From NCBI GenBank assembly GCA_002269645.1, contig NIVC01002090.1:10781-74780 (forward strand): a stretch of DNA of 64,000 nt, written 5' to 3'. Of the stretch, positions 12,171-54,651 are shown piece after piece (within the stretch, counting starts at the first letter, position 1; the number at the start of each line of letters is the position of its first letter). A program made the position numbers and the translations under genes. Origin of the DNA: Macrostomum lignano. Taxonomy: Eukaryota. The notes beneath the pieces were generated by a model. That model was not told the DNA's origin. It was given only the letters and a program-made list of their open reading frames with translations, and did no database searches.

Positions 12171-12389
12171 CAACCCCCAAGGCACATGCCAGGTACATGT
12201 GTACATGCCAGGCGATTAGAAAGTCAGGGCCGCTGTACACCCTGTGTGAGCGTGTGTAAAAGTGCGTGCTTGCGTACAGCATTGGCGCGCTTGTATGTGC
12301 TCAGGAGTCAGCGTTGAAATCGTTGCACCATGGTGGCCGCTGGCCATACATTTCAAGATGACGACGAGGCATTTAGTACTAAATATCAC

Positions 12390-15550: not shown

Positions 15551-17364
15551 TTTTAAAACTAAAAGCGAAATAACATGGCAACTTTTACTTGATGATACTT
15601 AAAGATAGAGCTTAAAAAACGGCCCATCTTGACCCCTTGTCCCCCGGGTCTATGACGTTACTGTCCTTAACTATTAAGCTGCAGTCCTATGGCCTTAGGT
15701 TAGATCATTAGTAGCAGATTATATTAGTTAAACTAAATGATAGAATTTACTGTAGATACAGATTGATCGAGCGAACTCCTGGCAGTTGATTGGTAACGGC
15801 TATCTCTCCTTCTTTCCATCCCTGACTTCATTAGCCCTAGTCCCGCTGGGTCACGTCCGCCTTCCTAAATTGAAGCCGTTTAGAAAGCTTCATAAGAAGA
15901 GAAAAAGGAGAGAGAGAGAGAGAGAGAGAGAGAGAAGCAGAGTAGAGTAAGGAGATGAAGCTGGCAGTTTTTCTTCAATCTTTCCTGCTATATATCGGTG
16001 CCTCTCTGCACAACACATAGTCTAGTCGGTAGGTAGGTAGGTAGCTCTCGTGCACGATTCCCCAAACAACTATGGAGTGGGTGGAGCAGTATACAATTAG
16101 GGCGGAAAGGCTTTTTCCTAGAAAAAACCTCCCCGCGATCTGAAGAGAGAAGAAGGTCGTGGAAGACTGGAGAGAGGAAGTGAGGAGATGAGTAGCGGGG
16201 CGAAGGTTAGTCTTGGCGATGCGGCTTGGTTTAAGGCGAAGGGCTAATATAATAAAAGTAATGGTCATGATGAGATGACAGAAAACTTCCTTAGATAAGT
16301 GAGTACCCCCACAGTTAGAGGCAGACTGTATCCGGGATCGCTGATGAAGCTTATGGGGAGCTTTCAACATTGAAACATATAAAGTTTCCATTCTGTAGTT
16401 TTATGATTGTGATATCTGTATATCCCAGCTCGCTACTTTTCAATGCCTTTCACTTTTCTGCGTCGGTATCTACTGCTTAATACTGAAACTACTGCATTGT
16501 GTTTCTCAGCACGCGCAGATTATTTATTCGCAGGGTGTGGCTAATGGCTAAGATAATCCTTAGGATACATTTTCCCTCTAGTGTTTTTTAATTTTAATGC
16601 CCGGGTGCACCAATGCACGCGGGAGTTTACTTTCTACTAGGATCGATATCATCTCTGTCCTCGCATTCGCATGGGATCGCAATGCAATCATATTCAGTTC
16701 TCAGCGCAATAATAATATTGACCCGACATTGTCCCCAATAATGCCTCTAGCGAAAAATCTTTCTTGTCAAATTCTCATGCATACTACTTATCGTATTTAA
16801 CAGTAGTCTAACTCTATGTGTATTGTGTTATTATTTTGTGCGAAGAAACATTCTAAAGTAATTTAGATTCAGTTTAACCATTGCTCTAATACAAAGGTGG
16901 AAAACTGAACGTAGCTTTTATGATTTCTTTTAGTTTATAGTCAGTTTATAGTGTTAATAGCCAGTTTATAGTTAGTTTATAGTCGATTTATAGTCACGAT
17001 CTATATAGCCATCAATGGTGAGTAGGTAAGCTACAGACCCGAATATTATAACAAAGTTATCCAAGCTTGAAATAAAATAAGCCAAGGTTAAAAACAGTTA
17101 ATTCATCTGCATATAGTGTCGCATCTAGTTATAGTTTATTACTAGCAATCTACGCCCCCCGTTGGGGAGCCAAAGAAATGCTATACACGTTTTTTTAATA
17201 AGCTACATGTATCCTTGAAATCTTAAAAAATCTCCTGTCAAACCTTGTAAGCCTTGACATGTCAGTAATTCCCCCCCCCCCAGCTTTAACATATCAACTT
17301 CCCCCTTGACATCTCAGCAATGCCCCCAATAAGCCTTGGAAATCTAAAAATATCTGTCAACCTT

Positions 17365-17408
17365 CTAACCCTAACCCTAACCCTAACCCTAACCCTAACC
17401 TAACCCTA
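17365..17408 (+). repeat. Interstitial telomeric tract (CCCTAA)n in Helitron A; also at 20863-20906 and 32745-32788
   Basis: About 7 hexamers each, visible directly. Confidence 0.9.
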
Positions 17409-18189
17409 AAGCATTGAAATTTCAGTAATTCTCTCTAAGAGTCATTATAGCACTACTACAGCATTATAGCGATAAGCTTCTTTCATTTTTTACATAACGC
17501 TTTTTTTATCAGCGATCCCTCGCCTGAGGAGGCATCAAATAATGTAATAAAAAGTTTTCAATAAACTACATGTAGCTTCTGACTTTAGCCTTGAAATCTC
17601 ATTTATACCCCCGTGAGCCTTGACATCTCAGCTATTCCCCCCCCGTCCGTAAGCTTTGACATGTCAGCGATGGCCCCCATAAACCTTGAAATCTAAAAAA
17701 TCCACTGTTAACCTTGAAACCCGATAAAATATAACCCTCAACCCACACCTGACCTAAACCTAACTTTAACCCAACCTAAAGCCTTGAAATCTCAGCAATT
17801 CTTCTCCCCTAAGCCTTGACATTTTAGTGATTCCTTCTTTAAGAATCACAGCACTATAACGATTTCCACCAAGCTTTGACATCGTAGCAATTCCCAAATG
17901 AATCTTTTAACTTCGACATGACTTGTCTTTTATGTATACATAGTGCTACTTTTATTTTTTACATGACTCTTCTTCTATCAGCACCCCCCCCATGGCGAGC
18001 CAACAAAGAATGCAATAAAAAATTGAGTAAAGTACATGAACTTTGAAGTAGCTTCTGACTTTTGCTTTGAGATCCCAGAAACAACCCCCCCCCCTCGTAA
18101 TCTCAGTTATTCTCTGAGAGCCTTTACGTCTCAGTTTTTCTTCCCAGCACAGCATTATAGCTGCATTTCATTTTTACATGACATCCTTC

Positions 18190-20010
18190 ATGTCTGACAT
18201 GACGCTTCTTTTGATTTTTACATTACACTTCTTTTATTCTTCCATGATGCTTCTTAATTTTTTAAATGATGCTTTCATTAGTTTTTAAATGAGGCTTCTA
18301 TGATTTTTTCATGACGCTTCTATGATTGTTTACATGACGCTTCTATGCTTTTTACATGACGCTTCTATGCTTTTTACATGACGCTTCTATGATTATTTCA
18401 TGACGCTTCGATGATTGTTTACATGACGCTTCTATGATTGTTTACATGATGCTTCTACGAATTCTGCAGGATGCTTCTATGATTTTTACATGATGCTTCT
18501 ATGATTTTTTCATGACGCTCCTATGATTTTTTCATGACGCTTCTATGATTTTTTCATGACGCTTCCATGATTTTTTACATGAAGCTACTATGATTTTTAC
18601 ATGACGCTTCCATGATTTTTTACATGACGCTTCTATGATTTTTTACATGACGCTTCCATGATTTTTTACATGACACTTCTATGATTTTTACATGACGCTT
18701 CTATGCTTTTTACATGACGCTTCCATGATTTTTTACATGACACTTCTATGATTTTTACATGATGCTTCCATGATTTTTTCATGACGCTTCTGTGATTGTT
18801 TATATGACGCTTCTATGCTTTTTGTATGACGCTTCCATGATTTTTTACATGACACTTCTATGATTTATACATGACGCTTCTATGATTTTTTCATGACGCT
18901 TCTGTGATTGTTTATATGATGCTTCTATGCTTTTTATATGACGCTTCTATGATTGTTTACATGACGCTTCTATGCTTTTTATATGACGATTCTATGATTT
19001 TTACATGACGCTTCTATGATTTTTACATGACGTTTCTATGATTTTTTCATGACGCTCCTATGTTTTTTTCATGACGCTTCTATGATTTTTTCATGATGCT
19101 TCTATGATTTTTACATGACGCTACTATAATTTTTACATGACGCTTCCATGATTTTTTACATGACGCTTCTATGCTTTTTACATGACGCTTCAATGATTAT
19201 TTCATGACGCTTCTACGATATCTGCAGGACGCTTCTATGATTGTTTACATGACGCTTCTATGATTTTTACATGACGCTTCTATGATTTTTTCAGGACGCT
19301 CCTATGTTTTTTTCATGACGCTTCTATGATTTTTTCATGACGCTTCCATGATTTTTTACATGACGCTTCTATGATTTTTTACATGACGCTTCCATGATTT
19401 TTTACATGACACTTCTATGATTTTTACATGACGCTTCCATGATTTTTTTTCATGACGCTTCCATGATTTTTTACATGACGCTTCCATGATTTTTTTCATG
19501 ACGCTTCTATGATTTTTACATGACGCTTCCATGATTTTTTACATGGCACTTCTATGATTTTTTGCATGACGCTTCTATGATTGTTTACATGACGCTTCTA
19601 TGATTTTTTACATGACGCTTCTATGATTGTTTACATGACACTTCTATGATTTTTTACATGACGCTTCTATGATTGTTTACATGACGCTTCTATGATTGTT
19701 TACATGACGCTTCTATGATTGTTTACATGACGCTTCTATGATTTTTTACATGACGCTTCTATGATATTTTCATGACGCTTCCACAATTTTTTACATGACG
19801 CTTCTATGAATTTACATGATGCTTCTACGATTTCTGCAGGACGCTTCTATGATTTTTACATGATGCTTCTATGATTTTTTCATGACGCTCCTATGATTTT
19901 TTCATGACGCTTCCATGATTTTTTACATGACGCTTCTATGATTTTTTACATAACGCTTCTATGATTTTTACATGACGCTTCTATGATTTTTTACATGACG
20001 CTTCTATGAT
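18190..20010 (+). repeat. About 21-bp minisatellite (CATGACGCTTCTATGATTTTTTA)n inside Helitron A; also at 21750-23390, 23894-24370, 33630-35275 and 35775-36250
   Basis: Direct periodicity; variants ATTGTTTA, ATTTTTTA and ATTTTTA. Confidence 0.95.
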
Positions 20011-23000
20011 TTTTTAGTTTTCTTTTTGGTGTTAAAAAGCTTTAATTAAAAAAATTCCACTCTCTAAAAATTCGAACCATCGTCCCTGCATTTAGCAGTC
20101 AGTCTGTTTACCTCTAGGCTAGCTCTCATCGTTTTGATAATATGAATTTTAGCACTTATAATTATAAGTTTCAAAACTCCAAGCATGGAGTAAATCACAC
20201 GAGGCAGTTATGACATAATCAATTTCTCAGTCAGTCAGTATCAGTTAACAATATGGTTACGCAATCTAAATCACGTCTGGTGTTTCGCTTCCACACTGCA
20301 TTTTCAATACTGTGACGCAATTCAAGTCGGAGTTACAATTCAGTTATGATGCAATCTATTTTAGAATCAGAATTCAACCAGTCAATTTTTTTCTAGCATT
20401 CTTACAATGCATTTCAAGTCGAAAAGTTTGCTTGACCTTTGCAAAAAAGCATGTTTTTCGAGTATTTAATGCCTTTAGCATCGAGCAATTTCTTAGCCAA
20501 GACACATGTACCGTCACGGGAAAATTTCTGATCGAACAGTGCAAGTCTCATGAAAATCGGTTAAGCCATTTTTTCTCTAATCGATTACAAGCAAGCAAGC
20601 AAGCAAGCAAGCAAGATTTTCATTTTTAGTATATAGGACTAGCAATCTACGCCCCCCGTTGGGGAGCCAAAGAAATGCAATACACGTTTTTTTAATAAGC
20701 TACATGTATCCTTGAAATCTTAAAAAATCTCCTGTCAAACCTTGTAAGCCTTGACATGTCAGTAATTCCCCCCCCACAAGCTTTAACATATCAACTTCCC
20801 CCCTTGACATCTCAGCAATGCCCCCAATAAGCCTTGGAAATCTAAAAATATCTGTCAACCTTCTAACCCTAACCCTAGCCTAACCCTAACCCTAACCCTA
20901 ACCCTAAAGCATTGAAATTTCAGTAATTCTCTCTAAGAGTCATTATAGCACTACTACAGCATTATAGCGATTCCTTGCAAGCCTCAACATCGTAGGGATT
21001 CCCAAATGAATCTCTTAACTTTGACATGAAGCTTCTTTTATTTTTTACATTACGCTTTTTTATCAGCGATCCCTCCCCTGAGGAGGCATCAAATAATGTA
21101 ATAAAAAGTTTTCAATAAACTACATGTAGCTTCTGACTTTAGCCTTGAAATCTCATTTATACCCCCGTGAGCCTTGACATCTCAGCTATTCCCCCCGTAA
21201 GCCTTAACATGTCAGCGATGGCCCCCATAAACCTTGAAATCTGAAAAATCCCCTGCTAACCTTGAAACCCGATAAAATATAACCCTCAACCCACACCTGA
21301 CCTAAACCTAACTTTAACCCAACCTAAAGCCTTGAAATCTCAGCAATTCTTCTCCCCTAAGCCTTGACATTTTAGTGATTCCTTCTTTAAGAATCACAGC
21401 ACTATAACGATTTCCACCTAGCTTTGACATCGTAGCAATTCCCAAATGAATCTTTTAACTTCGACATGACTTTTCTTTTATGTATACATAGTGCTACTTT
21501 TATTTTTTACATGACTCTTCTTCTATCAGCGCCCCCCCCCGTGACGAGCCAACAAAGAATGCAATAAAAAATGGAGTAAAGTACATGAACTTTGAAGTAG
21601 CTTCTGACTTTTGCTTTGACATCTCAGAAACCCCCCCCCCGTAATCTCAGTTATTCTCTGAGAGCCTTTACGTCTCAGTTTTTCTCCCCAGCACAGCATT
21701 ATAGTTGCATTTAATTTTTACATGAACCCTTCATGTCTGACATGACGTTTCTTTTATTCTACCATGACGCTTCTAATTTTTTAAATGACACTTTCATTAG
21801 TTTTAAATGAGGCTTCTATGATTTTTTCTTGACGCTTCTATGATTTTTACATGATGCTTCTATGATTTTTATATGACGTTTCTATATTGTTTACATGACG
21901 CTTCTATGATTGTTTACATGACGCTTCTATGATTGCTTACATGACGCTTCTATGATTTTTTACATGACGCTTCTATGATTGTTTACATGACGCTTCTACG
22001 ATTTTTTACATGACGCTTCTATGATTGTTTACATGACGCTTCTACGATTTTTACATGACGCTTCTATGATTGTTTACATGACGCTTCTATGATTTTTAAA
22101 TGACGCTTCTATGATTTTTACATGACGCTTCTATGATTTTTATATGACGTTTCTATGATTGTTTACATGACGCTTCTATGATTGTTTACATGACGCTTCT
22201 ATGATTGCTTACATGACGCTTCTATGATTTTTTACATAACGCTTCTATGATTGTTTACATGACGCTTCTACGATTTTTTACATGACGCTTCTATGATTTT
22301 TACATGACGCTTCTACGATTTTTTACATGACGCTTCTATGATTGTTTACATGACGCTTCTATGATTGTTTACATGACGCTTCTATGATTGTTTACATGAC
22401 GCTTCTACGATTTTTTACATGACGCTTCTATGATTGTTTACATGACGCTTCTATGTTTGTTTACATGACGCTTCTATGATTGTTTACATGACGCTTCTAT
22501 GATTTTTTACATGACGCTTCTATGATTGTTTACATGACGCTTCTATGATTGTTTACATGACGCTTCTATGATTGTTTACATGACGCTTCTACGATTTTTT
22601 ACATGACGCTTCTATGATTGTTTACATGACGCTTCTATGATTTTTACATGACGCTTCTATGATTGTTTACATGACGCTTCTATGATTTATATGACGTTTC
22701 TATGATTGTTTACATGACGCTTCTATGATTGTTTACTTGACGCTTCTATGATTGCTTACATGACGCTTCTATGATTTTTTACATAACGCTTCTATGATTG
22801 TTTACATGACGCTTCTACGATTTTTTACATGACGCTTCTATGATTGTTTACATGACGCTTCTACGATTTTTTACATGACGCTTCTATGATTGTTTACATG
22901 ACGCTTCTATGATTGTTTACATGACGCTTCTATGATTGTTTACATGACGCTTCTATGATTTTTACATGACGCTTGAATGATTGTTTACATGACGCTTCTA

Positions 23001-25129
23001 TGTTTGTTTACATGACGCTTCTATGATTGTTTACATGACGCTTCTATGACTTTTTAAATGACGCATCTATGATTTTTATATGACGCTTCTATGATTTTTT
23101 ACATGACGCTTCTATGATTGTTTACATGACGCTTCTATGATTTTTTACATGACGCTTCTATGATTTTTTACATGACGCTTCTATGATTGTTTTTATGACG
23201 CTTCTATGATTGTTTACATGACGCTTCTATGATTGTTTACATGACGCTTCTATGATTTTTTTAAATTACGCTTCTATGATTTTTTTTAGATAACGCTTCT
23301 TTGATTTTTAAATGACGCTTCTACGATTTTTTACATGACGCTTCTATGATTGTTTACATGACGCTTCTATGATTTTTACATGACGCTTCTTTTTAAAAAG
23401 TCTTTTAGTTTTCCTGATGTTGAAAAGCTTTAATTAAAAAAATTATACTCTATGAAAATTCGAACCAATTCGAACCAAACTGCATTTAGCAGTTCAGTTT
23501 GTTCACCTCTAGGCTAGCTCTCATCGTTTTGATAACATCAAATTTTTCACTTATATAATTCAACACTTTAAAATCCAAGCATAGAGTAAATTACACGAAG
23601 CAGTTATGACATAATCAGTTTCTCAGTCAGTCAGTATCAGTTAACAATATGGTTACGCAATTTAAATCAAGTTTGGTGCTACGCTTCCACACTGAGTTAC
23701 AATTCAGTTATGATGCAATCTATTTCAGAATCAGAATTCAACCAGTCAGTTTTTTCTCTAGCATTCTTACAATGCATTTCAAGTCGAAAAGTTTGCTTGA
23801 CCTTTGCAAAAAAGCATGTTTTTCGAATATTTAATGCCTTTAGCATCGAGCAATTTCTTAGCCACGATGCATGTACCGTCACGGGAAAATTTGTTTCACA
23901 TGACGCTTCTATGATTGTTTACTTGACGCTTCTATGATTGCTTACATGACGCTTCTATGATTTTTTACATAACGCTTCTATGATTGTTTACATGACGCTT
24001 CTACGATTTTTTACATGACGCTTCTATGATTGTTTACATGACGCTTCTACGATTTTTTACATGACGCTTCTATGATTGTTTACATGACGCTTCTATGATT
24101 GTTTACATGACGCTTCTATGATTGTTTACATGACGCTTCTATGATTTTTACATGACGCTTCTATGATTGTTTACATGACGCTTCTATGTTTGTTTACATG
24201 ACGCTTCTATGATTGTTTACATGACACTTCTATGATTTTTTACATGACGCTTCTATGATTGTTTACATGACGCTTCTATGATTGTTTACATGACGCTTCT
24301 ATGATTGTTTACATGACGCTTCTATGATTTTTTACATGACGCTTCTATGACTTTTTAAATGACGCTTCTTTTTAAAAAGTCTTTTAGTTTTCCTGATGTT
24401 GAAAAGCTTTAATTAAAAAAATTATACTCTATGAAAATTCGAACCAATTCGAACCAAACTGCATTTAGCAGTTCAGTTTGTTCACCTCTAGGCTAGCTCT
24501 CATCGTTTTGATAACATCAAATTTTTCACTTATATAATTCAACACTTTAAAATCCAAGCATAGAGTAAATTACACGAAGCAGTTATGACATAATCAGTTT
24601 CTCAGTCAGTCAGTATCAGTTAACAATATGGTTACGCAATTTAAATCAAGTCTGGTGCTACGCTTCCACACTGAGTTACAATTCAGTTATGATGCAATCT
24701 ATTTCAGAATCAGAATTCAACCAGTCAGTTTTTTCTCTAGCATTCTTACAATGCATTTCAAGCCGAAAAGTTTGCTTGACCTTTGCAAAAAAGCATGTTT
24801 TTCGAATATTTAATGCCTTTAGCATCGAGCAATTTCTTAGCCACGATGCATGTACCGTCACGGGAAAATTTCTGATCGAACAGTGCAAGTTCGAACAAAA
24901 TCGGTCCAGCCATTTTTTCTCTAATCGATCACATAGACACAGACAGACAATTTTTAGTATATACGAGTGGAACTCCTCCTTCGGAGGAGAAAGGGGAAGA
25001 ACTCCCATCACCGGAATTCTATTCCCTGAAATATCCATCAACTGAAATTCCATGTCTTTAACCCTATCTTCCAAATCGTCTCCAAATTCTTTACAAAATC
25101 TTTCAGAGACCATAGCTCAAAGACTCTCA

Positions 25130-25835
25130 AGTCTCTCATATCTCCTCTCTCCTCTCTCTCATCTCATCTCTACCCCTGCTCCCTTATTTATCTCTTCTCC
25201 CTCGTCTTTCGTCTGTACCTTCTCCTGTCTTCTGTCTCCTCTCTTCACTCTTATCTCTCCCTCTTCTCTCCTCTCTCATATGTCATCTCTACTCACTTAT
25301 CTATCGTCTCTCTTAACCCTCTCTCTCTCTTCTCTTTTCTCTTCTCTCTGCTCTCATTTCTCATATTTCATATACGCTCTGACACTACTTTCTTGTCTCC
25401 CATCTTTCTTCCTCCTTTTCACTATCCCCTGTCTCTTCTCTTCTCTCTTTTCTATTCTCTCCATTCTCTCTTTTCTCCTTTCCTTGCTCCTTTCATCTCT
25501 CTCCTCTCTCCTCACTCTCTTCTCCTTTCGCTTCTCTCTCCTCTCTCTCCTCTCATCTTTACTACCTTATTTATATCTTCTCCCTAGTCTTTCGTCTGTA
25601 CTCTCTCCTGTCTCCTCTCTCCCCTCCTCTCTCATCCCTCATCTCCTCATCTCACTCTTTCTTTCTCCTCTACTCTCCCCTCTCTTCTATTGCCTCTGTA
25701 CGCTCTTATCCCTCATCTATTCTCTCTCCTATCATCTCCAATCTGTCATGTCTAATCTCTCCACTCAATTATACTCTGTTTTCTATCATCTCTTCTCTCT
25801 TCTCTTTTCAGTCTTCTCTTTACTCTCTTCTCTGA
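25130..25835 (+). repeat. Polypyrimidine (CT-rich) low-complexity tract in B1; related tracts at 29610-30320, 37010-37720 and 43265-43975
   Basis: Source of the spurious Leu/Ser-rich ORFs. Confidence 0.9.
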
Positions 25836-25859
25836 CTGATTGAAGATGCCAAATCCATC

Positions 25860-26200
25860 AAGATCCTCTCCGCGAAGAAAAATCCTGTCTGTGCAACTAA
25901 AAACCATCGAAATCCTCTCAGTGAAACTGGACTCCTTCGAAATCCTCTCCTTGAAACTTAAATCCATCAAAATTGTTTCCATAAAACAGAAATCAATCAT
26001 AAATTATCTCCGCGAAACAGAAAGCCTCTCCGTGAAGCTGAACATGATCGAAATCCTCTCCGTGAAACTGAACACCATGGAAATCCTTTCGTGAAACTGA
26101 ACATCATCGAAATCCTCTCCACGAAACAGAAATCTTCTCCGTCAGAATTTAAACATTGAAATCGTCTCCGCTAAACTTGACTTAATCGAATTTTTTCCGT
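25860..26200 (+). repeat. Degenerate 30-bp subrepeat (GAAATCCTCTCCGTGAAACTGAACACCATC) in family B
   Basis: IEILSVKLNT-type 10-aa periodicity; present in every B copy before the TTAGGG tract. Confidence 0.85.
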
Positions 26201-26225
26201 CAAACAACTCAACTCGCCAGATTCA

Positions 26226-26259
26226 TTAGGGTTAGGGTTAGGGTTAGGGTTAGGGTTAG
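26226..26259 (+). repeat. Interstitial telomeric tract (TTAGGG)n in family B; also at about 27415, 28465, 30479, 38110, 39299, 40349, 41632 and 44132
   Basis: 3-6 hexamers, always directly after ATTCATT(GG). Confidence 0.9.
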
Positions 26260-32200: not shown

Positions 32201-32518
32201 TTCAAGTCGGAGTTACAATTCAGTTATGATGCAATCTATTTTAGAATCAGAATTCAACCAGTCAATTTTTTTCTAGCATTCTTACAATGCATTTCAAGTC
32301 GAAAAGTTTGCTTGACCTTTGCAAAAAAGCATGTTTTTCGAGTATTTAATGCCTTTAGCATCGAGCAATTTCTTAGCCAAGACACATGTACCGTCACGGG
32401 AAAATTTCTGATCGAACAGTGCAAGTCTCATGAAAATCGGTTAAGCCATTTTTTCTCTAATCGATTACAAGCAAGCAAGCAAGCAAGCAAGCAAGATTTT
32501 CATTTTTAGTATATAGGA

Positions 32519-35500: not shown

Positions 35501-38500
35501 GTTTCTCAGTCAGTCAGTATCAGTTAACAATATGGTTACGCAATTTAAATCAAGTCTGGTGCTACGCTTCCACACTGAGTTACAATTCAGTTATGATGCA
35601 ATCTATTTCAGAATCAGAATTCAACCAGTCAGTTTTTTCTCTAGCATTCTTACAATGCATTTCAAGTCGAAAAGTTTGCTTGACCTTTGCAAAAAAGCAT
35701 GTTTTTCGAATATTTAATGCCTTTAGCATCGAGCAATTTCTTAGCCACGATGCATGTACCGTCACGGGAAAATTTGTTTCACATGACGCTTCTATGATTG
35801 TTTACTTGACGCTTCTATGATTGCTTACATGACGCTTCTATGATTTTTTACATAACGCTTCTATGATTGTTTACATGACGCTTCTACGATTTTTTACATG
35901 ACGCTTCTATGATTGTTTACATGACGCTTCTACGATTTTTTACATGACGCTTCTATGATTGTTTACATGACGCTTCTATGATTGTTTACATGACGCTTCT
36001 ATGATTGTTTACATGACGCTTCTATGATTTTTACATGACGCTTCTATGATTGTTTACATGACGCTTCTATGTTTGTTTACATGACGCTTCTATGATTGTT
36101 TACATGACACTTCTATGATTTTTTACATGACGCTTCTATGATTGTTTACATGACGCTTCTATGATTGTTTACATGACGCTTCTATGATTGTTTACATGAC
36201 GCTTCTATGATTTTTTACATGACGCTTCTATGACTTTTTAAATGACGCTTCTTTTTAAAAAGTCTTTTAGTTTTCCTGATGTTGAAAAGCTTTAATTAAA
36301 AAAATTATACTCTATGAAAATTCGAACCAATTCGAACCAAACTGCATTTAGCAGTTCAGTTTGTTCACCTCTAGGCTAGCTCTCATCGTTTTGATAACAT
36401 CAAATTTTTCACTTATATAATTCAACACTTTAAAATCCAAGCATAGAGTAAATTACACGAAGCAGTTATGACATAATCAGTTTCTCAGTCAGTCAGTATC
36501 AGTTAACAATATGGTTACGCAATTTAAATCAAGTCTGGTGCTACGCTTCCACACTGAGTTACAATTCAGTTATGATGCAATCTATTTCAGAATCAGAATT
36601 CAACCAGTCAGTTTTTTCTCTAGCATTCTTACAATGCATTTCAAGTCGAAAAGTTTGCTTGACCTTTGCAAAAAAGCATGTTTTTCGAATATTTAATGCC
36701 TTTAGCATCGAGCAATTTCTTAGCCACGATGCATGTACCGTCACGGGAAAATTTCTGATCGAACAGTGCAAGTTCGAACAAAATCGGTCCAGCCATTTTT
36801 TCTCTAATCGATCACATAGACACAGACAGACAATTTTTAGTATATACGAGTGGAACTCCTCCTTCGGAGGAGAAAGGGGAAGAACTCCCATCACCGGAAT
36901 TCTATTCCCTGAAATATCCATCAACTGAAATTCCATGTCTTTAACCCTATCTTCCAAATCGTCTCCAAATTCTTTACAAAATCTTTCAGAGACCATAGCT
37001 CAAAGACTCTCAAGTCTCTCATATCTCCTCTCTCCTCTCTCTCATCTCATCTCTACCCCTGCTCCCTTCTTTATCTCTTCTCCCTCGTCTTTCGTCTGTA
37101 CCTTCTCCTGTCTTCTGTCTCCTCTCTTCACTCTTATCTCTCCCTCTTCTCTCCTCTCTCATATGTCATCTCTACTCACTTATCTATCGTCTCTCTTAAC
37201 CCTCTCTCTCTCTTCTCTTTTCTCTTCTCTCTGCTCTCATTTCTCATATTTCATATACGCTCTGACACTACTTTCTTGTCTCCCATCTTTCTTCCTCCTT
37301 TTCACTATCCCCTGTCTCTTCTCTTCTCTCTTTTCTATTCTCTCCATTCTCTCTTTTCTCCTTTCCTTGCTCCTTTCATCTCTCTCCTCTCTCCTCACTC
37401 TCTTCTCCTTTCGCTTCTCTCTCCTCTCTCTCCTCTCATCTTTACTACCTTATTTATATCTTCTCCCTAGTCTTTCGTCTGTACTCTCTCCTGTCTCCTC
37501 TCTCCCCTCCTCTCTCATCCCTCATCTCCTCATCTCACTCTTTCTTTCTCCTCTACTCTCCCCTCTCTTCTATTGCCTCTGTACGCTCTTATCCCTCATC
37601 TATTCTCTCTCCTATCATCTCCAATCTGTCATGTCTAATCTCTCCACTCAATTATACTCTGTTTTCTATCATCTCTTCTCTCTTCTCTTTTCAGTCTTCT
37701 CTTTACTCTCTTCTCTGACTGATTGAAGATGCCAAATCCATCAAGATCCTCTCCGCGAAGCAGAAATCCTGTCCGTGCAACTGAAAACCATCGAAATCCT
37801 CTCCGTGAAACTGGACTCCTTCGAAATCCTCTCCTTGAAACTTAAATCCATCAAAATCGTCTCCATAAAACAGAAATCAATCATAACTTATCTCCGCGAA
37901 ACAGAAAGCCTCTCCGTGAAGCTGAACATGATCGAAATCCTCTCCGTGAAACTGAACACCATGGAAATCCTTTCGTGAAACTGAACATCATCGAAATCCT
38001 CTCCACGAAACAGAAATCTTCTCCGTCAGAATTTAAACATTGAAATCGTCTCCGCTAAACTTGACTTAATCGAATTTTTTCCGTCAAACAACTCAACTCG
38101 CCAGATTCATTAGGGTTAGGGTTAGGGTTAGGGTTAGGGTTAGAACTACGCACAGCTTCGTGTTAAAAGGCACAGATAAAAATATTGAACTAATTGTATC
38201 AATTCATTGCGCAACCGATTTCACAGTCAGTCAGTATCAGCCTCAGGTAAAGTTAACAAAAACATTGCGCAATCTAAATCGACCCTCCAATACACAGCAG
38301 CAGTGAGAAGTTGAACCCTCCCCCCAACAATCTTTGCAGATTAAAGTACAATCTTTGCAGAAAGTTAAAGCTGTGCTTTTTCTTTTCATATTTAAAGCAA
38401 ACAACTTATATCCCCGAACTCAGCGTTGCAAGATCTTGCCAGCAATATAAGTTTCTCCTCTCAAAGTTTAAAACTCGAGGAACAGTTAGCGTTTGAAACT

Positions 38501-41500
38501 GTCTGATTTATAGCATTGAAGTATCGAGTGTACGTTCACTGCCTGCTTGAAAGTTGATGCATTGAATTTCAATGTCCAACAAATACACAGGACTGCCCAT
38601 TGAAAGGCAGGAAAACTTATCAGTAGCCATATTATTGCGCAATTATCTATAAAGTCAGCCAGTGAGCCAGGGTCCAAGTGTACACACGCAGCCACTGAGA
38701 ACGCTCCCACCCCCCACTGGAAAGAAAATACACTACAGAGATAGGGAAAAGTTGTGGCGCAATCACTAAAAATTCATGCATTTTTCAGCTCCAAGCAGAA
38801 AGAGGGGACAATTAAGATTATTAAAGGTCAAGACCGCCGTTTTCTGCTTTTTTGAGGATCTTAGAAATTAAAATTTCAGAATTAAAATAGCCTATAGCCG
38901 ACCTCGGATAATTTCCAATCTTCCCATATAAGTTTCAACGCTGAGTTGGCACTATTCAAGGAGGAGTTGTCGAAATGACAGACAGACATACAGACAGACA
39001 TACAGACAGACAAACAACGCGTCAACTTTAGTATATACGAGGCCAACTCCTCCTTCGGAGAAGAAAGGGGAAGAACTCCAATCAGCGGAATTCCATTCCC
39101 TGAACTCCATCAGCGGAATCCCATTTTCCAACACCTCTCCGCGCAACAGAAATCGTCTCCGTGAAACTGAACACTATCGAAATCCTCTCCGTGAAACTGA
39201 ACACCATCGAAATATTCTCCGCGAAATAGAAATCCTCTCCGTGAAACTGGACTAAATCGAAATTTCTACGTCAAACAGCCCAGCTCTCAGAATTCATTGG
39301 TTAGGGTTAGGGTTAGAGCTACACACAGCTGCGTGTTGAAAGGCGCCGTAAAAACATTGAACCAATTAAATTGCGCAACTTATTTCTCAGGCAGTCAGTA
39401 TCAGCCTCAGTTAAAGTTAACAAAAAGATTGCGCAATCTAAATCAACCCTCAAATACACAGCAACCGACCCCCCTTCCAATACGCAGTGCAGCTAGAAAT
39501 TGAACCCCCCCCACCAACTATTGGGGGGTCGGTCGAACCCCCATTGAACTCCAAAATGAGCACAATCTTTGCAGAAAGCTTAAAGTATGAAAATCTTTTC
39601 TTGAATGCTGTGAATTTAATTTTCATATTTAAAGCAAAAAACTTATATCCCCGAACTCATCGCAGCAAGATCTTTCCAGCAATATAAGTCTCTCCTCTCT
39701 AAGTTCAAAACTCGAGCAACAGTTAGTGTTTGAAACTTTCTGATTTTAAGCATTGAAATATCGAGTGTACCTTCACTGCCTGCTAAAGATGCTCGCGAGT
39801 TTATGCATTAAAATGCACTGAATTTCACTGTGCAAAAAATACACAGGGCTTCCTGTTAAAAAACAGAACACAAATAGTTGCGCAATTGTCTATAAAGTCA
39901 GCCAGTGAGCCAGGGTCCAATTGTACACACGCCGCCAATGAGAACGCGCCCATTCCCCCACAGGAGAGAAAATGCACTGGCGACATAGGAAAAAGTTGTG
40001 GCGTAATCACTCAAAATTTATGCAAATTTTCAGCTCCGAGCAGAAAAAGTGTCCAGAGAAGGTTAGGAAATCAGATTTCTGCTTTTTTAGGGATCTTAAA
40101 ATTAAAAAATGAAAGATTAAAACAGCCTAAAGCCGATTCCGGAAAATTTGCAGTATTCCCATATAAGTTTCAACGCTGAGTTGCACGTAGTCTAGGAGGA
40201 GATATCCTACAAACAAACAGACAAACAAACAAACAAACAACGCACCAACTTTAGTATTAAAATATTCTCCGCGAAATAGAAATCCTCTCCGTGAAACTGG
40301 ACTAAATCGAAATTTCTACGTCAAATAGCCCAGCTCTCAGAATTCATTGGTTAGGGTTAGGGTTAGGGTTGACAGCTGCGTGTTGAAAGGCGCCGTAAAA
40401 ACATTGAACCAATTAAATTGCGCAACTTATTTCTCAGGCAGTCAGTATCAGCCTCAGTTAAAGTTAACAAAAAGATTGCGCAATCTAAATCAACCCTCAA
40501 ATACACAGCAACCGACCCCCCTTCCAATACGCAGTGCAGCTAGAAATTGAACTCCCCCCACCAACTATTGGGGGTCGGTCGAACCCCCATAGAACTCCAA
40601 AATGAGCACAATCTTTGCAGAAAGCTAAAAGTATGAAAATCTTTTCTTGAATGCTGTGAATTTAATTTTCATATTTAAAGCAAAAAACTTATATCCCCGA
40701 ACTCATTGCAGCAAGATCTTTCCAGCAATATAAGTCTCTCCTCTCTAAGTTCAAAACTCGAGCAACAGTTAGTGTTTGAAACTTTCTGATTTTAAGCATT
40801 GAAATATCGAGTGTACGTTCACTGCCTGCTAAAGATGCTCGCAAGTTTATGCATTAAAATGCACTGAATTTCACTGTGCAAAAAATACACAGGGCTTCCT
40901 GTTAAAAAACAGAACACAAATAGTTGCGCAATTGTCTATAAAGTCAGTCAGTGAGCCAGGGTTCAAGTGTACACACGCAGCCACTGAGAACGCGACCATC
41001 CCCCCACTTGAGAGAAAATACACTGCCAAGATAGAAAAATTTTATGGCGCAATCACTAAAATTGATACAAATTTTCAGCTCCAAGCAGAAAGAGGGGACA
41101 ATTAAGATTATCAAAGGTCAAGACCGCCATTTTCTGCTTTTTTAGGGATCTTAAAAATTGAAAATGAAAGATTAAAATAGCCTAAAGCCATCCTCGGAAA
41201 ATTTGCAGTTTTCCCATATAAGTTTCAACGCTGACTTGCAAGTATTCTAGGAGGAGTTATCCAACAAACACACACACACACAGACAAACAACGCACCAAC
41301 TTTAGTATTAACGAGGCCAACTCCTCCTCTGGAGGAGAAAGGGGAAGAATTCCCATCACCGGTACTCCATTCCCTGAAATGCCATTCCCTGAATCCCATC
41401 ATCCAACTCCTCTCCGCGAAACTGAACATCATCGAAATCTTCTCCGTAAAAGAGAACTCCATCAAACACCTCTCCGTGAAACTGACATTCATCAAAATCC

Positions 41501-44500
41501 CCTCCGAGAAATAGAAATCCTCTCCACCAAACAGAAATCCTCTCCGTCAAAATTAAAACATTGAAATCGTCTCCGCTAAACTGGACTCAATCGATTTTTT
41601 CCGTCAAACAACTCAACTCTCCAGATTCATTGGTTAGGGTTAGGGTTAGGGTTAGGGTTAGAACTACGCACAGCTTCGTGTTAAAAGGCACTGATAAAAA
41701 TATTGAACTAATTGAATCAATTCATTGCGCAACCGATTTCTCAGTCAGTCAGTATCAGTCTCAGTTAAAGTTAACAAAAACATTGCGCAATCTAAATCAA
41801 CCCTCCAATACACAGCAGCAGTGAGAAGTTGAACCCTCCCCCCCAACTTTATCTATTACGTCTCGCAAAACTGAGAACAATTTTTGCAGAAAATTAAAAG
41901 CATGGAAATAGTTTTTTTTAAATGCTGTGCTTTTTCTTTTCATATTTAAAGATAACAAATTATATCCCCGAACTCAGCGTTGCAAGATCTTTCCAGCAAT
42001 ATAAGTTTCTCCTATCAAAGTTAGAAACTCGAGCAACAGTTTGCGTTTGAAACTTTCTGATTTAAAGCATTGAAATATCGAGTGTACGTTCACTGCCTGC
42101 TAAAGAGGCTCGCAAGTTTATGCATTGAATTTCAATGTCCAAAACTTCACAGGGCAGCCTATTGAAAGGCACAGATAATAAAACAAATTGATGGCGCAAC
42201 CGATTTCACAGTCAGTCAGTATCAGTCTCAGTTCAAGTTAACAAAAAGTTTGCGCAATCTAAATCAACCCTCCAGTACACAGCGCCCGACCCCCTTCCAC
42301 TACGCAGTGGCAGTTAGAAATTGAACCCCCAACTGTTGGGGGTCGGTCGAACGCCCATTGAACCCCAAAATGAGTACAATCTTTGCAGAAAGCTAAAAGT
42401 CTGGAAATAGTTTTTTTGATGCTGTGCTTTTAGTTTTTCTATTTAAAGCAAACAATTTATATCCTCGAACTCAGTGTTGCAAGATCTATTCAGCAGTATA
42501 AGTCTCTTCTCTTAACATTTAGAACTCGAAGAGCAGTTAGCGTTTGAAACTGTCTGATTTATAGCATTGAAGTATCGAGTGTACGTTAACTACCTGCTTG
42601 CTAGCTGATGCATTGAATTTCAATGTCCAACAAATACACAGGGCTGCCCATTGAGAGGCAAGAAAACTTATCAGTAGCCAAATCATTGCGCAATTATCTA
42701 TACAGTCAGCCAGTGAGCCAGGGTCCAAGTGTACACACGCCGCCACTGAGAACGCCCCCATCCCCCACTGGAGAGAAAATACACTGCCGAGATAGGAAAA
42801 AGTTGTTGCGTAATCACTCAAAATTCATGCAAATTTTCAGCTCCGAGCGGAAAGAGAGGACAATTAAGATTATCAAAGGTCAGAATTGCCGTTTTCTGCT
42901 TTTTTAGGGATCTTAAAATGTAAAAATAAAAGATTAAAATAGCCTAAAGCCATCCTCGGAAAATTTGCAGTTTTCCCACATAAGTTTCAACGCTGACTTG
43001 CAAGTATTCTAGGAGGAGATATCCAACAAACACACACACACACAGACAAACAACGCACCAGTTTTAGTATTAACGAGAGAAGAGAAGAAAGAAAGACGAG
43101 TGGAACTCCTCCTTCGGAGGAGAAAGGGGAAGAACTCCCATCACCGGAATTCCATTCCCTGAAATATCCATCAACTGAAATTCCATGTCTTGAACCCTAT
43201 CTTCCAAATCGTCTCCAAATTCTTTACAAAACCTTTCAAAGACCATAGCTCAAAGACTTTCACGTCTCTCATATTTCCTCTCTCCTCTCTTTGCAATTTT
43301 CGTGACTCTACTCTCTCTCCTCTCTCTCATCTCATCTCTACCCGTACTCCCTTATTTATGTTTTCTCCCTCATCTTTCGTCTGTACCTTCTCTTGTCTCT
43401 TGTCTCCTCTCTTCTCTCATATCTCTCCTCTTCACTTCTGTCTCCTGTCTCCTCTCTTCTCTCTTATCTCTCCCTCTTCTCTCCTCTCTCATATGTCATC
43501 TCTACTCACTTATCTATCGTATCTCTTAACCCTCTCTCTCTCTTCTCTTTTCTCTTCTCTCTGCTCTCATTTCTCATATCTCATATACGCTCTCACACTC
43601 TACTTTCTTGTCTCCCATCTTTCTTTCCTCCTTTCCACTATCCCCTGTCTCTTCTCTTCTCTCTTTTCTGTCCTCTCCATTCTCTCTTTTCTCCTCTCCT
43701 TGCTCCTTTCTTCTTCTCCCTCTCTTCTCTAATGTCCTATCTCTTCTCTCTTATGTTCTCACTCATCTCTTCTCATTGCATCTCTCATCTCTCCTCTCCT
43801 CACTACTTTCCTCTCTACACTCTCTCATCTCTGATCTTTCATCTCTCTCCTCTCTCCTCTCTCCTCCCATCTCTACTACCTTATTTATATCTTCTTGGTC
43901 TTTCGTCTCTACTCTCTCCTGTCTCCTTTCTCCCGTCTTTTCTCCTCTCTTCTCTCTCCCCTCCTCTCTCATCTGGACTCATCTGAAACTGGACTCCTTC
44001 GAAATCCTCTCCGTGAAACTGAGGACCATCGAAATCCTCTCCGTGAAACTGAAAACCATCGAAATTCTTTCTTTTAAACTGAACTCAATCGAAATTTTCT
44101 CCGTCAAAAAGAATAAATATCAGGATTCATTGGTTAGGGTTATTGTTAGGGTTAGGGTTAGGGTTAGAGCTACACACAGCTGCGTGTTCAAATAAAAAAT
44201 GAACCAATTGAATCAATTGATTGCGCAACCGATTTCACAGTCAGTCAGTATCAGTCTCAGTTAAAATTAACAAAAAGATTGCGCAATTTAAATCAACCCT
44301 CCTGTACACAGAGACCGACCCCTTTTCAATACGCAGTAGCAGTTAGAAATTGAACCCCCATCTGTTGGGGGCATTGAACCAAAAAATGAGTACAATCTTT
44401 GCATAAAGCTAAAAGTATGGAAATAGTTTTTTTGATGCTGCTCTTTTAGTCTTTATATTTATAGCAAACAATTTATATCCTCGAACTCAGCGTTGCAAGA

Positions 44501-46168
44501 TCTTTTCAGCAGTATAAGTATCTTCTCTTAAAGTTTAGAACTCGAAGAGCAGTTAGCGTTTGAAAGTTCCCGTTTTAAGGCATTGAAATATCGCGTGTAC
44601 GTTCACTGCCTGCCAAAGAGGCTCGCAAATTTATTCATTCATTACACAGGCTGGCTATTACACAGGGCAGCCTATTGAAAGGCACAGATAATTAAAAAAA
44701 TTGATGGCGCAACCGATTTCACAGTCAGTCAGTATCAGTCTCAGTTAAAGTTAAGAAAAACATTGCGCAATCTAAATCAACCCTCCAATACACAGCAGCA
44801 GTAAGAAGTTGAACCCTCCCCCCAACTTTATCTGTTACGTCTCGCAAAACTGAGTACAATTTTTGCAGAAAGTTAAAAGTATGGAAATAGTTTTTTCAAT
44901 GCTGTGCTTTTTCTTTTCATATTTAAAGCAAACAATTTATATCCCTGAAATCAGCTTTGCAAGTTCTTTCCAGCAATATTAATTTTTTCTCTCAAAGTTA
45001 AAAACTCGAGCAACAGTTTGCGTTTGAAACTTTCTGATTTAAAGCATTGAAATATCAATTGTACGTTCACTGCCTGCTAAAGAGGCCCGCAAGTTGATGC
45101 ATTGAATTTCAATGTCCAACAAATACACAGGACTGCCCATTGAAAGGCAGGAAAACTTATCAGTAGCCATATCATTGCGCAATTATCTATAAAGTCAGCC
45201 AGTGAGCCAGGGTCCAAGTGTACACACGCAGCCACTGAGAACGCTCCCACCCCCCACTGGAAAGAAAATACACTACAGAGATAGGGAAAAGTTGTGGCGC
45301 AATCACTAAAAATTCATGCATTTTTCAGCTCCAAGCAGAAAGAGGGGACAATTAAGATTATTAAAGGTCAAGACCGCCGTTTTCTGCTTTTTTGAGGATC
45401 TTAGAAATTAAAATTTCAGAATTAAAATAGCCTATAGCCGACCTCGGATAATTTCCAATCTTCCCATATAAGTTTCAACGCTGAGTTGCCACTATTCAAG
45501 GAGGAGTTGTCGAAATGACAGACACACAGACAGACAGACAGACAGACAAACAACGCGTCAACTTTAGTATATATAGATAGATAGATAGATAGAGGATCTA
45601 AAAATTCGAACCATCGTCCCTGCATTTAGCAGTCAGTCTGTTTACCTCTAGGCTAGCTCTCATCGTTTTGATAATATGAATTTTAGCACTTATAATTATA
45701 AGTTTCAAAACTCCAAGCATGGAGTAAATCACACGAGGCAGTTATGACATAATCAATTTCTCAGTCAGTCAGTATCAGTTAACAATATGGTTACGCAATC
45801 TAAATCACGTCTGGTGTTTCGCTTCCACACTGCATTTTCAATACTGTGACGCAATTCAAGTCGGAGTTACAATTCAGTTATGATGCAATCTATTTTAGAA
45901 TCAGAATTCAACCAGTCAATTTTTTTCTAGCATTCTTACAATGCATTTCAAGTCGAAAAGTTTGCTTGACCTTTGCAAAAAAGCATGTTTTTCGAGTATT
46001 TAATGCCTTTAGCATCGAGCAATTTCTTAGCCAAGACACATGTACCGTCACGGGAAAATTTCTGATCGAACAGTGCAAGTCTCATGAAAATCGGTTAAGC
46101 CATTTTTTCTCTAATCGATTACAAGCAAGCAAGCAAGCAAGCAAGATTTTCATTTTTAGTATATAGGA
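32519..46168 (-). mobile_element. Composite Helitron unit 3 (13,650 bp): near-identical to unit 2 plus one extra family-B copy
   Basis: ORF-track entries recur at an offset of about 11,880-11,884 up to about 41310 and about 13,654 afterwards; extra segment at about 41312-43072. Confidence 0.8.
36847..45596 (-). mobile_element. Second train of family B elements (B1' 36847, B2' 39038, B3' 40260, extra B5 41312-43072, B4' 43097-45596)
   Basis: Same termini and modules as 24964-31942; B5 has the hairpin variant CTCCTCC-TCT-GGAGGAG. Confidence 0.7.
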
Positions 46169-46323
46169 TTCAATTATTATTAAGTAGTTTTTACTGAACT
46201 TCGAGTACCTCAAATGTAATACAATATAATAGGCTCATCCGTAAGGTTTTTATTGAGCAATTAATCAAGCTTAAATTAGTTGACCTCAGTTGACCCTAAA
46301 CTCCGTATTCCTATCTTCTTTAG

Positions 46324-46902: not shown

Positions 46903-46943
46903 GTGAGCGAGCTCTAGTGCTCTAATTGTGATAATAAGGAAAT

Positions 46944-49745: not shown

Positions 49746-50395
<650 letters not shown>

Positions 50396-54640: not shown

Positions 54641-54651
54641 CTGTCTGTCTT

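What the first reader, a model, noticed from the sequence alone, without database searches (positions are those of the whole stretch)
17142..46168. 29-kb non-coding Helitron concatemer with complete canonical termini in one AT target
What looks like a mess of satellites is one bounded structure. The minus strand starts A|TCCTATATACT (46168) and ends with a GC hairpin, 8 nt, then CTAG|T (17142). Removing it restores ...agtttattA|Ttcaattatt... with no TSD, the established Helitron signature. It has three units of 3,497, 11,880 and 13,650 bp and no RepHel ORF, so it would need a transposase in trans. It looks like a rolling-circle system that assembles and moves multi-kilobase satellite cassettes.
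Basis: partly seen in the sequence, partly recalled or inferred. Interest (0 to 1): 0.85.

Follow-up and report, generated by a model that had tools for sequence, protein, structure and literature searches.

The report
Head-to-tail array of non-autonomous Helitrons
The 29-kb "mess of satellites" is three non-coding Helitron-type rolling-circle transposons joined head to tail in one A|T site between two animal genes, a real and tidy example of a kind of array already described in plants, bats, flies and frogs.

Summary
On the minus strand, 46168..17142 consists of exactly three whole units of 13,650, 11,880 and 3,497 bp. Each starts TCCTATATACTAAAAATG and ends with a GC hairpin, 8 nt, then CTAG. 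The units are joined CTAG|TC with nothing between them. A host A and T flank the array in a 73% AT site, with no target duplication. No unit has coding capacity.

- The units are not copies of one circle. The small unit is a simple element: leader, 23-bp satellite and 3' modules.
- The two large units are composites. Each has the same 575-bp leader, four or five older sub-elements of 1-2.5 kb, and an older diverged copy of the simple element that supplies the CTAG end.
- The sub-elements are joined by a second, non-CTRR hairpin|TCGTATATACTAAA junction.
- The two large units are 99.85% identical. They differ by exactly one sub-element, and the breakpoint is a recombinant hybrid.

So at least one junction needs Helitron chemistry. 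The last duplication is explained as well by unequal homologous recombination. Movement of the 29 kb as one piece is not shown. No other copy, empty site or RepHel partner could be found with the collections available. Tandem Helitron arrays and satellite-carrying Helitrons/Helentrons are already published, so this is a new member of a known kind.

The parts
17142..46168 (-). Whole array: three complete head-to-tail non-autonomous Helitron-type units. Flanked by host A (46169, complement) and host T (17141, complement).
32519..46168 (-). Unit 3, 13,650 bp, composite: leader A + (TCTA)n + sub-elements B1-B5 + element D.
20639..32518 (-). Unit 2, 11,880 bp. Same composite as unit 3 but lacking one B sub-element. 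18 mismatches in 11,851 aligned positions against unit 3.
17142..20638 (-). Unit 1, 3,497 bp, the simple element: 576-bp leader, 23-bp satellite array, three paralogous 3'-end modules, with the CTAG terminus on the last.
46151..46168 (-). 5' terminus TCCTATATACTAAAAATG of unit 3. Identical copies at 32501-32518 and 20621-20638. Followed by a (CTTG)n microsatellite.
17142..17169 (-). 3' terminus of unit 1: hairpin GCTCCCC-AAC-GGGGGGC, 8 nt, CTAG. Identical copies at 20639-20666 and 32519-32546.
45594..46168 (-). Leader A of unit 3 (575 bp). Identical to the leaders of unit 2 (31940-32518) and unit 1, apart from a 4-bp microsatellite indel. Breaks off at ...TTTTTAG, where unit 1 continues collinearly with D.
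43100..45573 (-). Sub-element B1 of unit 3 (2,474 bp). Starts TATATACTAAAGTTGACGCG + (GTCT)n and ends with hairpin CTCCTCC-GAA-GGAGGAG + TTCCAC. Counterpart in unit 2 at about 29446-31919.
41315..43099 (-). Sub-element B2 of unit 3 (1,785 bp). This is the piece absent from unit 2. Unit 2 instead carries a hybrid with a B2 start and a B3 body at about 28377-29445.
40261..41314 (-). Sub-element B3 of unit 3 (1,054 bp). Starts TCGTTAATACTAAAGTTGG and lacks a 3' hairpin.
39041..40260 (-). Sub-element B4 of unit 3 (1,220 bp), 92.8% identical to B3. Counterpart in unit 2 at 27157-28376.
36850..39040 (-). Sub-element B5 of unit 3 (2,191 bp). Starts TCGTATATACTAAAGTTG and ends with hairpin + TTCCAC. 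Counterpart in unit 2 at 24967-27156.
32519..36849 (-). Element D of unit 3 (4,331 bp), an older full copy of the unit-1 type: TCGTATATACTAAAAATT + (GTCT)n, a leader 87-95% identical to leader A, 23-bp satellite arrays, and 3' modules ending in the CTAG terminus. Counterpart in unit 2 at 20639-24966.
18197..20016 (-). 23-bp satellite array (about 81 copies) in unit 1. Related arrays at 21763-23390, 23891-24369, 33644-35273 and 35774-36252. Short-period tandem repeats make up about 8.3 kb (29%) of the 29 kb.
   Evidence: satellite-like monomers follow each internal 3'-end-like module
17369..17398 (-). (TTAGGG)5 block inside the 3' module. Ten blocks of 3-5 telomere-type repeats lie in the window, all inside the array and in both orientations.

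Best explanation
This is a tandem array of non-autonomous, Helitron-type rolling-circle transposons in a single AT-rich intergenic A|T site. It lies about 120 bp upstream of an ORF that is probably the first exon of the downstream gene.

How such elements move (established for Helraiser, inferred here): a RepHel transposase supplied in trans nicks at the 5' TC, unwinds 5' to 3', and uses the 3' hairpin plus CTAG as terminator. It joins CTAG to TC in a circle and integrates that circle between A and T.

Proposed history (inferred):
1. A simple 3.5-kb element of the unit-1 type is the currently or recently active form.
2. A 12-14-kb chimeric element arose when the 575-bp leader of such an element became fused to an older, same-orientation array. 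That array held B-type sub-elements and an older copy (D). Transposition then ran through to D's CTAG terminator, which is end bypass or read-through capture.
3. The composite and the simple element became joined CTAG|TC. This could happen by insertion of one element exactly at the A|T formed by the host A and the T of the resident 5' TC. It could also happen by homologous integration of a joined-end circle, or by read-through at a donor locus.
4. The composite was then duplicated very recently. The most economical route is unequal sister-chromatid exchange between the identical 576-bp leaders of units 2 and 1.
5. One B sub-element was then lost or gained by the same kind of recombination.
For: Shown:
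- Exact canonical termini occur three times, with precise CTAG|TC junctions.
- The hairpin lies 8 nt from CTAG.
- Flanks are A and T with no target duplication, in a 73% AT site.
- The array holds a whole number of units and its boundaries coincide with the motifs. The flanks share nothing with the element.
- There is no coding capacity.
- Unit 1 is collinear with D across the point where leader A breaks off in units 2 and 3.
- All three leaders are identical over 576 bp, while D's leader is only 87-95% identical.
- Units 2 and 3 differ by 18 substitutions and one 1.77-kb indel equal to one B period. The junction in unit 2 is a hybrid of a B2 start and a B3 body.

From the literature:
- Helraiser makes circles with the 5'-TC joined precisely to the CTAG-3'. 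The hairpin acts as terminator, and its loss causes capture of flanking DNA. Head-to-tail junctions and tandem Helitron arrays are known in plants and bats (PMC5876387).
- Tandem Helitron copies occur on a Drosophila Y chromosome.
- Xenopus has Helitron-derived tandem arrays and Helitrons filled with minisatellites.
Against: - No second locus, empty site or autonomous partner could be examined. Mobility of any unit is inferred only from its termini.
- The order of events is not resolved by the sequence. The leaders are identical in all three units, so they carry no phylogenetic signal.
- The internal B-type junctions end in ...TTCCAC or ...TTGGCC, not CTRR. The older parts are therefore not canonical Helitrons.
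- The overall layout (subterminal palindromic GTATATAC, (GTCT)n microsatellite, central tandem repeats, 3' palindrome) resembles Helentron-associated HINE/DINE-1 elements.
- A false tandem duplication of units 2 and 3 by the assembler cannot be excluded from the sequence alone.
Confidence: 0.75

Rival explanations
1. One reading: the whole 29-kb trimer is one mobile entity. It was made as a rolling-circle concatemer or by read-through across three elements at a donor locus, and was inserted in a single event into this A|T site.
For: There is one A|T site and one pair of outer termini. The inner junctions are exactly those of a joined-end circle or concatemer. Helraiser can bypass a 3' end (PMC5876387).
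Against: The units are heterogeneous (3.5 kb against 12-14 kb), so they are not successive laps of one circle. A donor locus with the same trimer would itself still need explaining. The difference between units 2 and 3 is a recombinational indel, which shows local recombination after or instead of transposition. No second copy of the trimer is available.
Confidence: 0.12
2. The elements belong to the Helentron/Helitron2 lineage (HINE, DINE-1-like) rather than to canonical Helitrons. Under this reading the real target is T|T, using the one-base ambiguity at the junction, and the TC/CTAG ends are a look-alike.
For: The architecture matches published HINEs: a palindromic motif (GTATATAC) 2-3 nt from the 5' end, a (GTCT)n or (CTTG)n microsatellite directly after it, central tandem repeats, and a 3' palindrome 8-35 nt from the end (PMC4067079; PMC7492417). 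A weak inverted match to the 5' end (GTGTATAGCA, 8 of 10) lies 38-47 nt from the 3' end, where a 3' subTIR would sit. The B-type junctions lack CTRR.
Against: SubTIRs of 11 bp or more are a defining feature and are absent. The 8-of-10 match is at chance level (about 0.2 expected in 400 nt) and drops to 7 of 10 in units 2 and 3. There are no T-runs at the boundaries. A T|T parse leaves an unexplained extra T at each internal junction, whereas the TC/CTAG parse explains them exactly.
Confidence: 0.15
3. The duplication of units 2 and 3 is an assembly artefact. Two haplotypes that differ by the 1.8-kb B2 indel were laid in tandem through the identical 576-bp leader, and the true locus is a dimer.
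For: The units are 99.85% identical, with differences of the kind seen between alleles: one repeat-unit indel, single satellite monomers and a microsatellite step. The 576-bp leader is an exact repeat at both places where the path would branch.
Against: The window carries many long arrays assembled without breaks, which points to long reads that would span 576 bp. The junction is base-perfect. There is nothing in the sequence, such as N runs or abrupt ends, to suggest a join.
Confidence: 0.1
4. This is an ordinary satellite or segmental tandem duplication, and the Helitron-like ends are coincidental.
For: The whole window is unusually rich in minisatellites unrelated to the element. Unequal recombination is demonstrably active inside the array.
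Against: An array made by slippage or unequal exchange has arbitrary phase and partial end units. This one has exactly three whole units. Their phase coincides with TC, hairpin + CTAG and A|T flanks; a rough joint chance is about 1e-6 (my estimate). Two structurally different units share a base-perfect junction, which homology-driven exchange cannot create.
Confidence: 0.03

Closest known systems
Helibat1 / Helraiser (canonical animal Helitron; PMC5876387)
   Same: 5'-TC and CTAG-3' ends, a palindrome a few nt upstream of the 3' end, an A|T target and no target duplication. The joined-end product CTAG|TC is identical to the internal junctions here.
   Different: Helraiser is autonomous, encoding RepHel. 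The elements here are non-coding, full of tandem repeats, and found as a heterogeneous array. From memory only, not tested: the first nine bases, TCCTATATA, resemble the Helibat 5' end.
Tandem Helitron arrays: centromeric Helitrons of plants (Xiong, Dooner & Du 2016, cited in PMC5876387), bat Helitrons, Helitron-1_DPe on the Drosophila pseudoobscura Y (10.1101/2021.06.02.446622), Xenopus Helitron-derived arrays (PMC12001565)
   Same: Head-to-tail junctions of the last bases fused to the first bases. The arrays are attributed to rolling-circle replication. Non-autonomous copies dominate.
   Different: Those arrays are mostly repeats of one element type. Here a 3.5-kb element abuts two 12-14-kb chimeras that themselves contain an older array with a different 3' end.
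HINE / DINE-1-like non-autonomous Helentrons, for example Cg_HINE of Crassostrea gigas (PMC7492417) and HINE-Mo and DINE-1 (PMC4067079)
   Same: A short 5' module followed by a (GTCY)n-type microsatellite, a central satellite-like array, a 3' palindrome and no coding capacity. These elements are carriers that spread tandem repeats.
   Different: HINEs have 11-15-bp subterminal inverted repeats, T-runs at the ends and a TT target. Here no subTIR is present, the ends are TC/CTAG and the flanks are A and T. No significant sequence similarity to an oyster Cg170-type repeat was found.
Chimeric or gene-capturing Helitrons formed by 3'-end bypass (Helraiser experiments summarised in PMC5876387)
   Same: A 5' end of one element is combined with downstream foreign DNA and the next usable terminator. 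This is the proposed origin of the 12-14-kb units.
   Different: The captured material here is not host genes. It is an older same-orientation array of related rolling-circle elements.

Membership tests
Canonical Helitron (Helitron1 type), non-autonomous | 5' terminus TC | tested here: met
   All three units begin TCCTATATAC.
Canonical Helitron (Helitron1 type), non-autonomous | 3' terminus CTRR | tested here: met
   All three units end CTAG. The internal B-type junctions end CCAC or GGCC and do not meet it.
Canonical Helitron (Helitron1 type), non-autonomous | [quoted passage not shown] | tested here: met
   A 7-bp stem with a 3-nt loop lies 8 nt before CTAG; dG -8.6 kcal/mol, z -2.8.
Canonical Helitron (Helitron1 type), non-autonomous | Inserted between host A and T, no target-site duplication | tested here: met
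   Flanks are A (46169, complement) and T (17141, complement), with no flanking direct repeat. One base of ambiguity remains at the 3' side.
Canonical Helitron (Helitron1 type), non-autonomous | An empty site exists (allele or paralogue without the element) | not testable with these tools
   The source genome is not in any collection searched.
Canonical Helitron (Helitron1 type), non-autonomous | No terminal inverted repeats | tested here: met
   No inverted copy of the first 14 nt occurs anywhere in the units at 2 mismatches or fewer.
Canonical Helitron (Helitron1 type), non-autonomous | Dispersed copies at other loci, and an autonomous RepHel element with the same ends | not testable with these tools
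   No RepHel is present in the window. External searches found no relatives.
Helentron / HINE (DINE-1-like) | Subterminal inverted repeats of 11-15 bp (5' subTIR 2-4 nt from the end, 3' subTIR upstream of the palindrome) | tested here: not met
   The best inverted match is 8 of 10 (7 of 10 in units 2 and 3), which is chance level. Definition from PMC4067079.
Helentron / HINE (DINE-1-like) | TT target, with T-runs at the element boundaries | tested here: inconclusive
   There are no T-runs. The flanks read A and T under the TC/CTAG parse. A T|T parse is possible only by giving the first T to the host, which leaves an extra T at each internal junction.
Helentron / HINE (DINE-1-like) | 5' microsatellite, central tandem repeats, 3' palindrome 8-35 bp from the end | tested here: met
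   (CTTG)n, (GTCT)n or (GT)n follows every 5' motif. Central arrays of 23 bp and 30 bp are present. The palindrome ends 12 nt (main type) or 6 nt (B type) from the end.
Plain satellite DNA / segmental tandem duplication | Array phase arbitrary with respect to any transposon signal; partial units at the edges; units homologous throughout | tested here: not met
   The array holds exactly three whole units, its phase falls on TC/CTAG, and unit 1 differs structurally from units 2 and 3.

The most novel reading that the evidence does not exclude
The 12-14-kb composite is itself an active transposition unit. A young Helitron 5' end would have taken over a whole older head-to-tail array of HINE-like sub-elements with non-CTRR ends, and would mobilise it using a distant CTAG terminator. 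If so, one family bridges canonical Helitron termini and the Helentron/HINE body plan, and rolling-circle read-through would be a direct way of packaging and spreading kilobase-scale higher-order repeat arrays together with interstitial telomere repeats.
Probability: 0.2. Interest if true: 0.55.

Novelty: new member of a known kind. Interest (0 to 1): 0.3.

Why it matters
The locus is a clean textbook case. It shows three things side by side: joined-end Helitron junctions, a chimeric element apparently built by end bypass, and later remodelling by unequal recombination. Its value is for annotation. Nearly half of this window would otherwise be masked as unrelated satellites, when it is one structured insertion next to a gene start. 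It is also a starting point for finding the family and its autonomous partner in the source genome. It does not open a new question about how Helitrons work. Tandem Helitron arrays and repeat-carrying Helitrons and Helentrons are already documented in several phyla.

Tried and rejected
- Metagenome scan with a conserved 20-mer of the leader: 14 loci, all 20-23-nt chance matches on alignment.
- Protein-space search with the 145-aa chance ORF that spans an internal junction, meant to pull out other copies from public assemblies: nothing.
- Exact-pattern scans of genome contigs and viral contigs with a leader 24-mer and the 3' terminus: nothing.
- Organism identification with an SDA1 exon: the best hit is 72% to a cestode. 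The host is probably an animal, and its own proteins are not in the database.
- Rfam and tRNA scans of the window: nothing, so no ribozyme or retrozyme explanation.
- Full-text search for TCCTATATA: only unrelated primers.
- Comparison with an oyster Cg170/CL1 repeat taken from a supplement: only short matches in inconsistent orientation, E >= 0.07. Rejected.
- Idea that the 23-bp satellite derives from the CTAG|TC junction: rejected, since the local alignment is no better than shuffles (p about 0.3). Satellite-like monomers do follow each of the two degenerate internal 3'-end modules (p < 0.002).
- Asymmetric terminal inverted repeats: only a chance-level 8-of-10 match.
Full report
**What is at the coordinates**

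Read on the minus strand, the region 46168..17142 is three complete units laid head to tail.
- Unit 3 is 46168-32519 (13,650 bp), unit 2 is 32518-20639 (11,880 bp) and unit 1 is 20638-17142 (3,497 bp).
- Each unit starts with the same 18 nt, TCCTATATACTAAAAATG. There are 3 exact copies against 0.11 expected by chance.
- Each unit ends with the same 28 nt, CTCCCCAACGGGGGGCGTAGATTGCTAG. There are 3 exact copies against 0 expected.
- The end of one unit touches the start of the next, as ...GATTGCTAG|TCCTATATAC..., with no base between.
- The 3' end folds into a 7-bp GC stem with a 3-nt loop, followed by 8 nt and CTAG. The fold has dG -8.6 kcal/mol and z -2.8 against shuffles.
- The array is flanked by A on the 5' side and T on the 3' side. 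Joining the flanks gives agtttattA|Ttcaattatt in a 73% AT context, with no flanking direct repeat.
- Nothing inside the array resembles either flank. The outer boundaries are therefore defined independently of the motifs, yet they fall exactly on them.
- One base is ambiguous: the T after the last CTAG could be host T or element T.

**Coding capacity and context**

- The longest ORF inside is 267 aa of low-complexity sequence from a (TCTCTTC)n tract.
- Ten internal ORFs have no Pfam match, so there is no RepHel.
- Rfam and tRNA scans are empty.
- The window is eukaryotic. Exons of an SDA1 homologue lie at 2.7-6.1 kb, and a coiled-coil/PDZ gene lies at 60.5-63.6 kb.
- The best available relative of the SDA1 exon is a cestode protein at 72% identity. 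The host is therefore probably an animal whose own proteins are not in the database.
- The array sits between the two genes, about 120 bp upstream of a 211-aa ORF (46290-46925) that may be a first exon.

**Anatomy: the units are not alike**

Unit 1 is a simple element with three parts:
- a 576-bp leader, made of the 5' end, a (CTTG)n microsatellite and unique sequence;
- an array of about 81 copies of a 23-bp satellite;
- three paralogous 3' modules of about 400-470 bp, of which only the last keeps an intact hairpin and CTAG.

The two degenerate 3' modules are each followed by one or two satellite-like monomers.

Units 2 and 3 are composites.
- Each carries the same leader, identical over 575 bp apart from a 4-bp microsatellite step.
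- The leader breaks off at ...TTTTTAG and is followed by a (TCTA)n tract.
- Then come B-type sub-elements of 1.05-2.5 kb: five in unit 3 (B1-B5) and four in unit 2.
- Last comes element D, 4.3 kb.

D is an older full copy of the unit-1 type. It starts TCGTATATACTAAAAATT + (GTCT)n. Its leader is 87-95% identical to leader A. It carries the same 23-bp satellite, and it provides the CTAG terminus of the whole composite. Unit 1 is collinear with D across the point where leader A breaks off.

The B sub-elements and D are joined by a second junction grammar...CTCCTCC-GAA-GGAGGAG-TTCCAC or -TTGGCC | TCGTATATACTAAA + microsatellite. The logic is the same as at the main junctions (hairpin, a few nt, then a homologous 5' motif), but the 3' end is not CTRR.

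Short-period tandem repeats make up about 8.3 kb (29%) of the 29 kb. All ten (TTAGGG)3-5 blocks in the window lie inside the array.

**How the array was probably built**

A base-perfect junction between two structurally different elements (unit 2 | unit 1) cannot come from homology-driven exchange. It also carries the exact joined-end signature CTAG|TC that Helraiser produces in its circular intermediates (PMC5876387). That junction therefore needs Helitron chemistry. Three routes fit:
- insertion of a new copy at the A|T formed by the host A and the T of the resident TC;
- homologous integration of a circle;
- read-through at a donor locus.

The composite units look like the product of end bypass. 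A young 5' end was fused to an older same-orientation array and terminated at the next good terminator (D's). This matches the experimentally shown role of the hairpin as terminator and the capture that follows its loss.

The third unit needs no transposase.
- Units 2 and 3 differ by 18 substitutions in 11,851 aligned positions.
- They also differ by two single satellite monomers, one microsatellite step and one 1.77-kb indel.
- The indel equals one B period, and the junction in unit 2 is a hybrid of a B2 start and a B3 body. This is the footprint of unequal homologous recombination.
- The same process, acting between the identical 576-bp leaders of units 2 and 1, would generate exactly the observed u3-u2-u1 arrangement.

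I therefore prefer stepwise assembly: Helitron-specific joining once or twice, then recombination. I rate a single 29-kb rolling-circle product as less likely. The identical leaders carry no signal that could order the events, so this part is inference.

**Family assignment**

All sequence-level hallmarks of a canonical Helitron are met for the three outer units: TC, CTAG, a subterminal hairpin, A|T flanks, no target duplication and no terminal inverted repeats (definitions in PMC5876387 and PMC13085455).

The body plan is that of Helentron-associated HINE/DINE-1 elements (PMC4067079; PMC7492417). It has a palindromic GTATATAC 2-3 nt from the 5' end, a (GTCT)n-type microsatellite, central tandem repeats and a 3' palindrome. 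However, the defining subTIRs of 11-15 bp are absent. The best match is 8 of 10, at chance level. There are no terminal T-runs.

Without the autonomous partner, the lineage (Helitron1 against Helitron2/Helentron) cannot be settled. I give the Helentron reading about 0.15.

**What could not be done**

- The metagenome scan returned only chance 20-mers.
- The protein-space search for other copies was empty.
- The genome and viral scans were empty.
- An assembly artefact for the near-identical units 2 and 3 remains possible, at about 0.1.

**Novelty**

- Head-to-tail Helitron junctions and tandem arrays are reported from plants and bats, a Drosophila Y chromosome and Xenopus.
- Satellite arrays carried and spread by non-autonomous Helentrons are described in oysters.
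- Helitrons full of satellites and next to telomeric repeats are described in Paramecium.

This locus is a well-preserved new member of that kind. The less usual traits are the heterogeneity of the array, the chimeric 12-14-kb units that contain an older array with non-CTRR junctions, and the telomere-type repeats in every sub-element. Interest is modest, at 0.3.

Noticed in passing
window 1541-2554 and 61262-62052: The same 28-bp minisatellite (CAGATCCTCAGTTGCTGGGCCAGCCTCC, 36 and 28 copies, 86-92% identical between the two sites, same orientation) lies next to exons of two different genes, 59 kb apart on either side of the Helitron array. Both arrays are open in several frames and run into long ORFs.
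   Followed up: no
window 3127-3964, 6396-7377, 9508-10439, 11500-12171, 46942-47455, 51320-54061, 58012-58681, 63630-63997: The flanks are also unusually dense in unrelated minisatellites (units of 16-33 bp, up to 86 copies), some of them inside introns of the SDA1-like gene. The 'mess of satellites' is therefore a property of the whole region, not only of the Helitron array.
   Followed up: partly
window 17369, 20884, 26226, 28467, 30493, 32766, 38110, 40351, 41634, 44146: Ten blocks of 3-5 telomere-type repeats (TTAGGG/CCCTAA) are present. All lie inside the array, in one orientation in the CTAG-type 3' modules and the opposite orientation in the B-type sub-elements. It is not known whether they are cargo, targets or chance derivatives.
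   Followed up: partly
window 17505-18040 (minus strand): Unit 1 contains two degenerate internal copies of the 3'-end module (...GGCTCGCCATGGGGGGGTGCTGATAG and ...GCCTCCTCAGGCGAGGGATCGCTGATAA). Each is followed at once by 23-bp-satellite-like monomers. This suggests the satellite expanded from a motif lying just downstream of an old 3' end.
   Followed up: partly
window 49747-50416 and 54641-55039: Two very long tetranucleotide microsatellites lie in the right flank: (ACTA) with about 167 copies and (CTGT) with about 101 copies.
   Followed up: no
window 46290-46925 (+): A 211-aa ORF starts about 120 bp from the array's 5' boundary. It has a poly-proline tract and a coiled-coil tail, and no Pfam match. 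It may be the first exon of the downstream coiled-coil/PDZ gene (60.5-63.6 kb), which would put the array in that gene's promoter region.
   Followed up: partly
window 1-64000: There is a sharp compositional contrast: 33-42% GC inside the array against 43-61% GC in the gene-bearing flanks. GC skew is persistently negative across the array.
   Followed up: no
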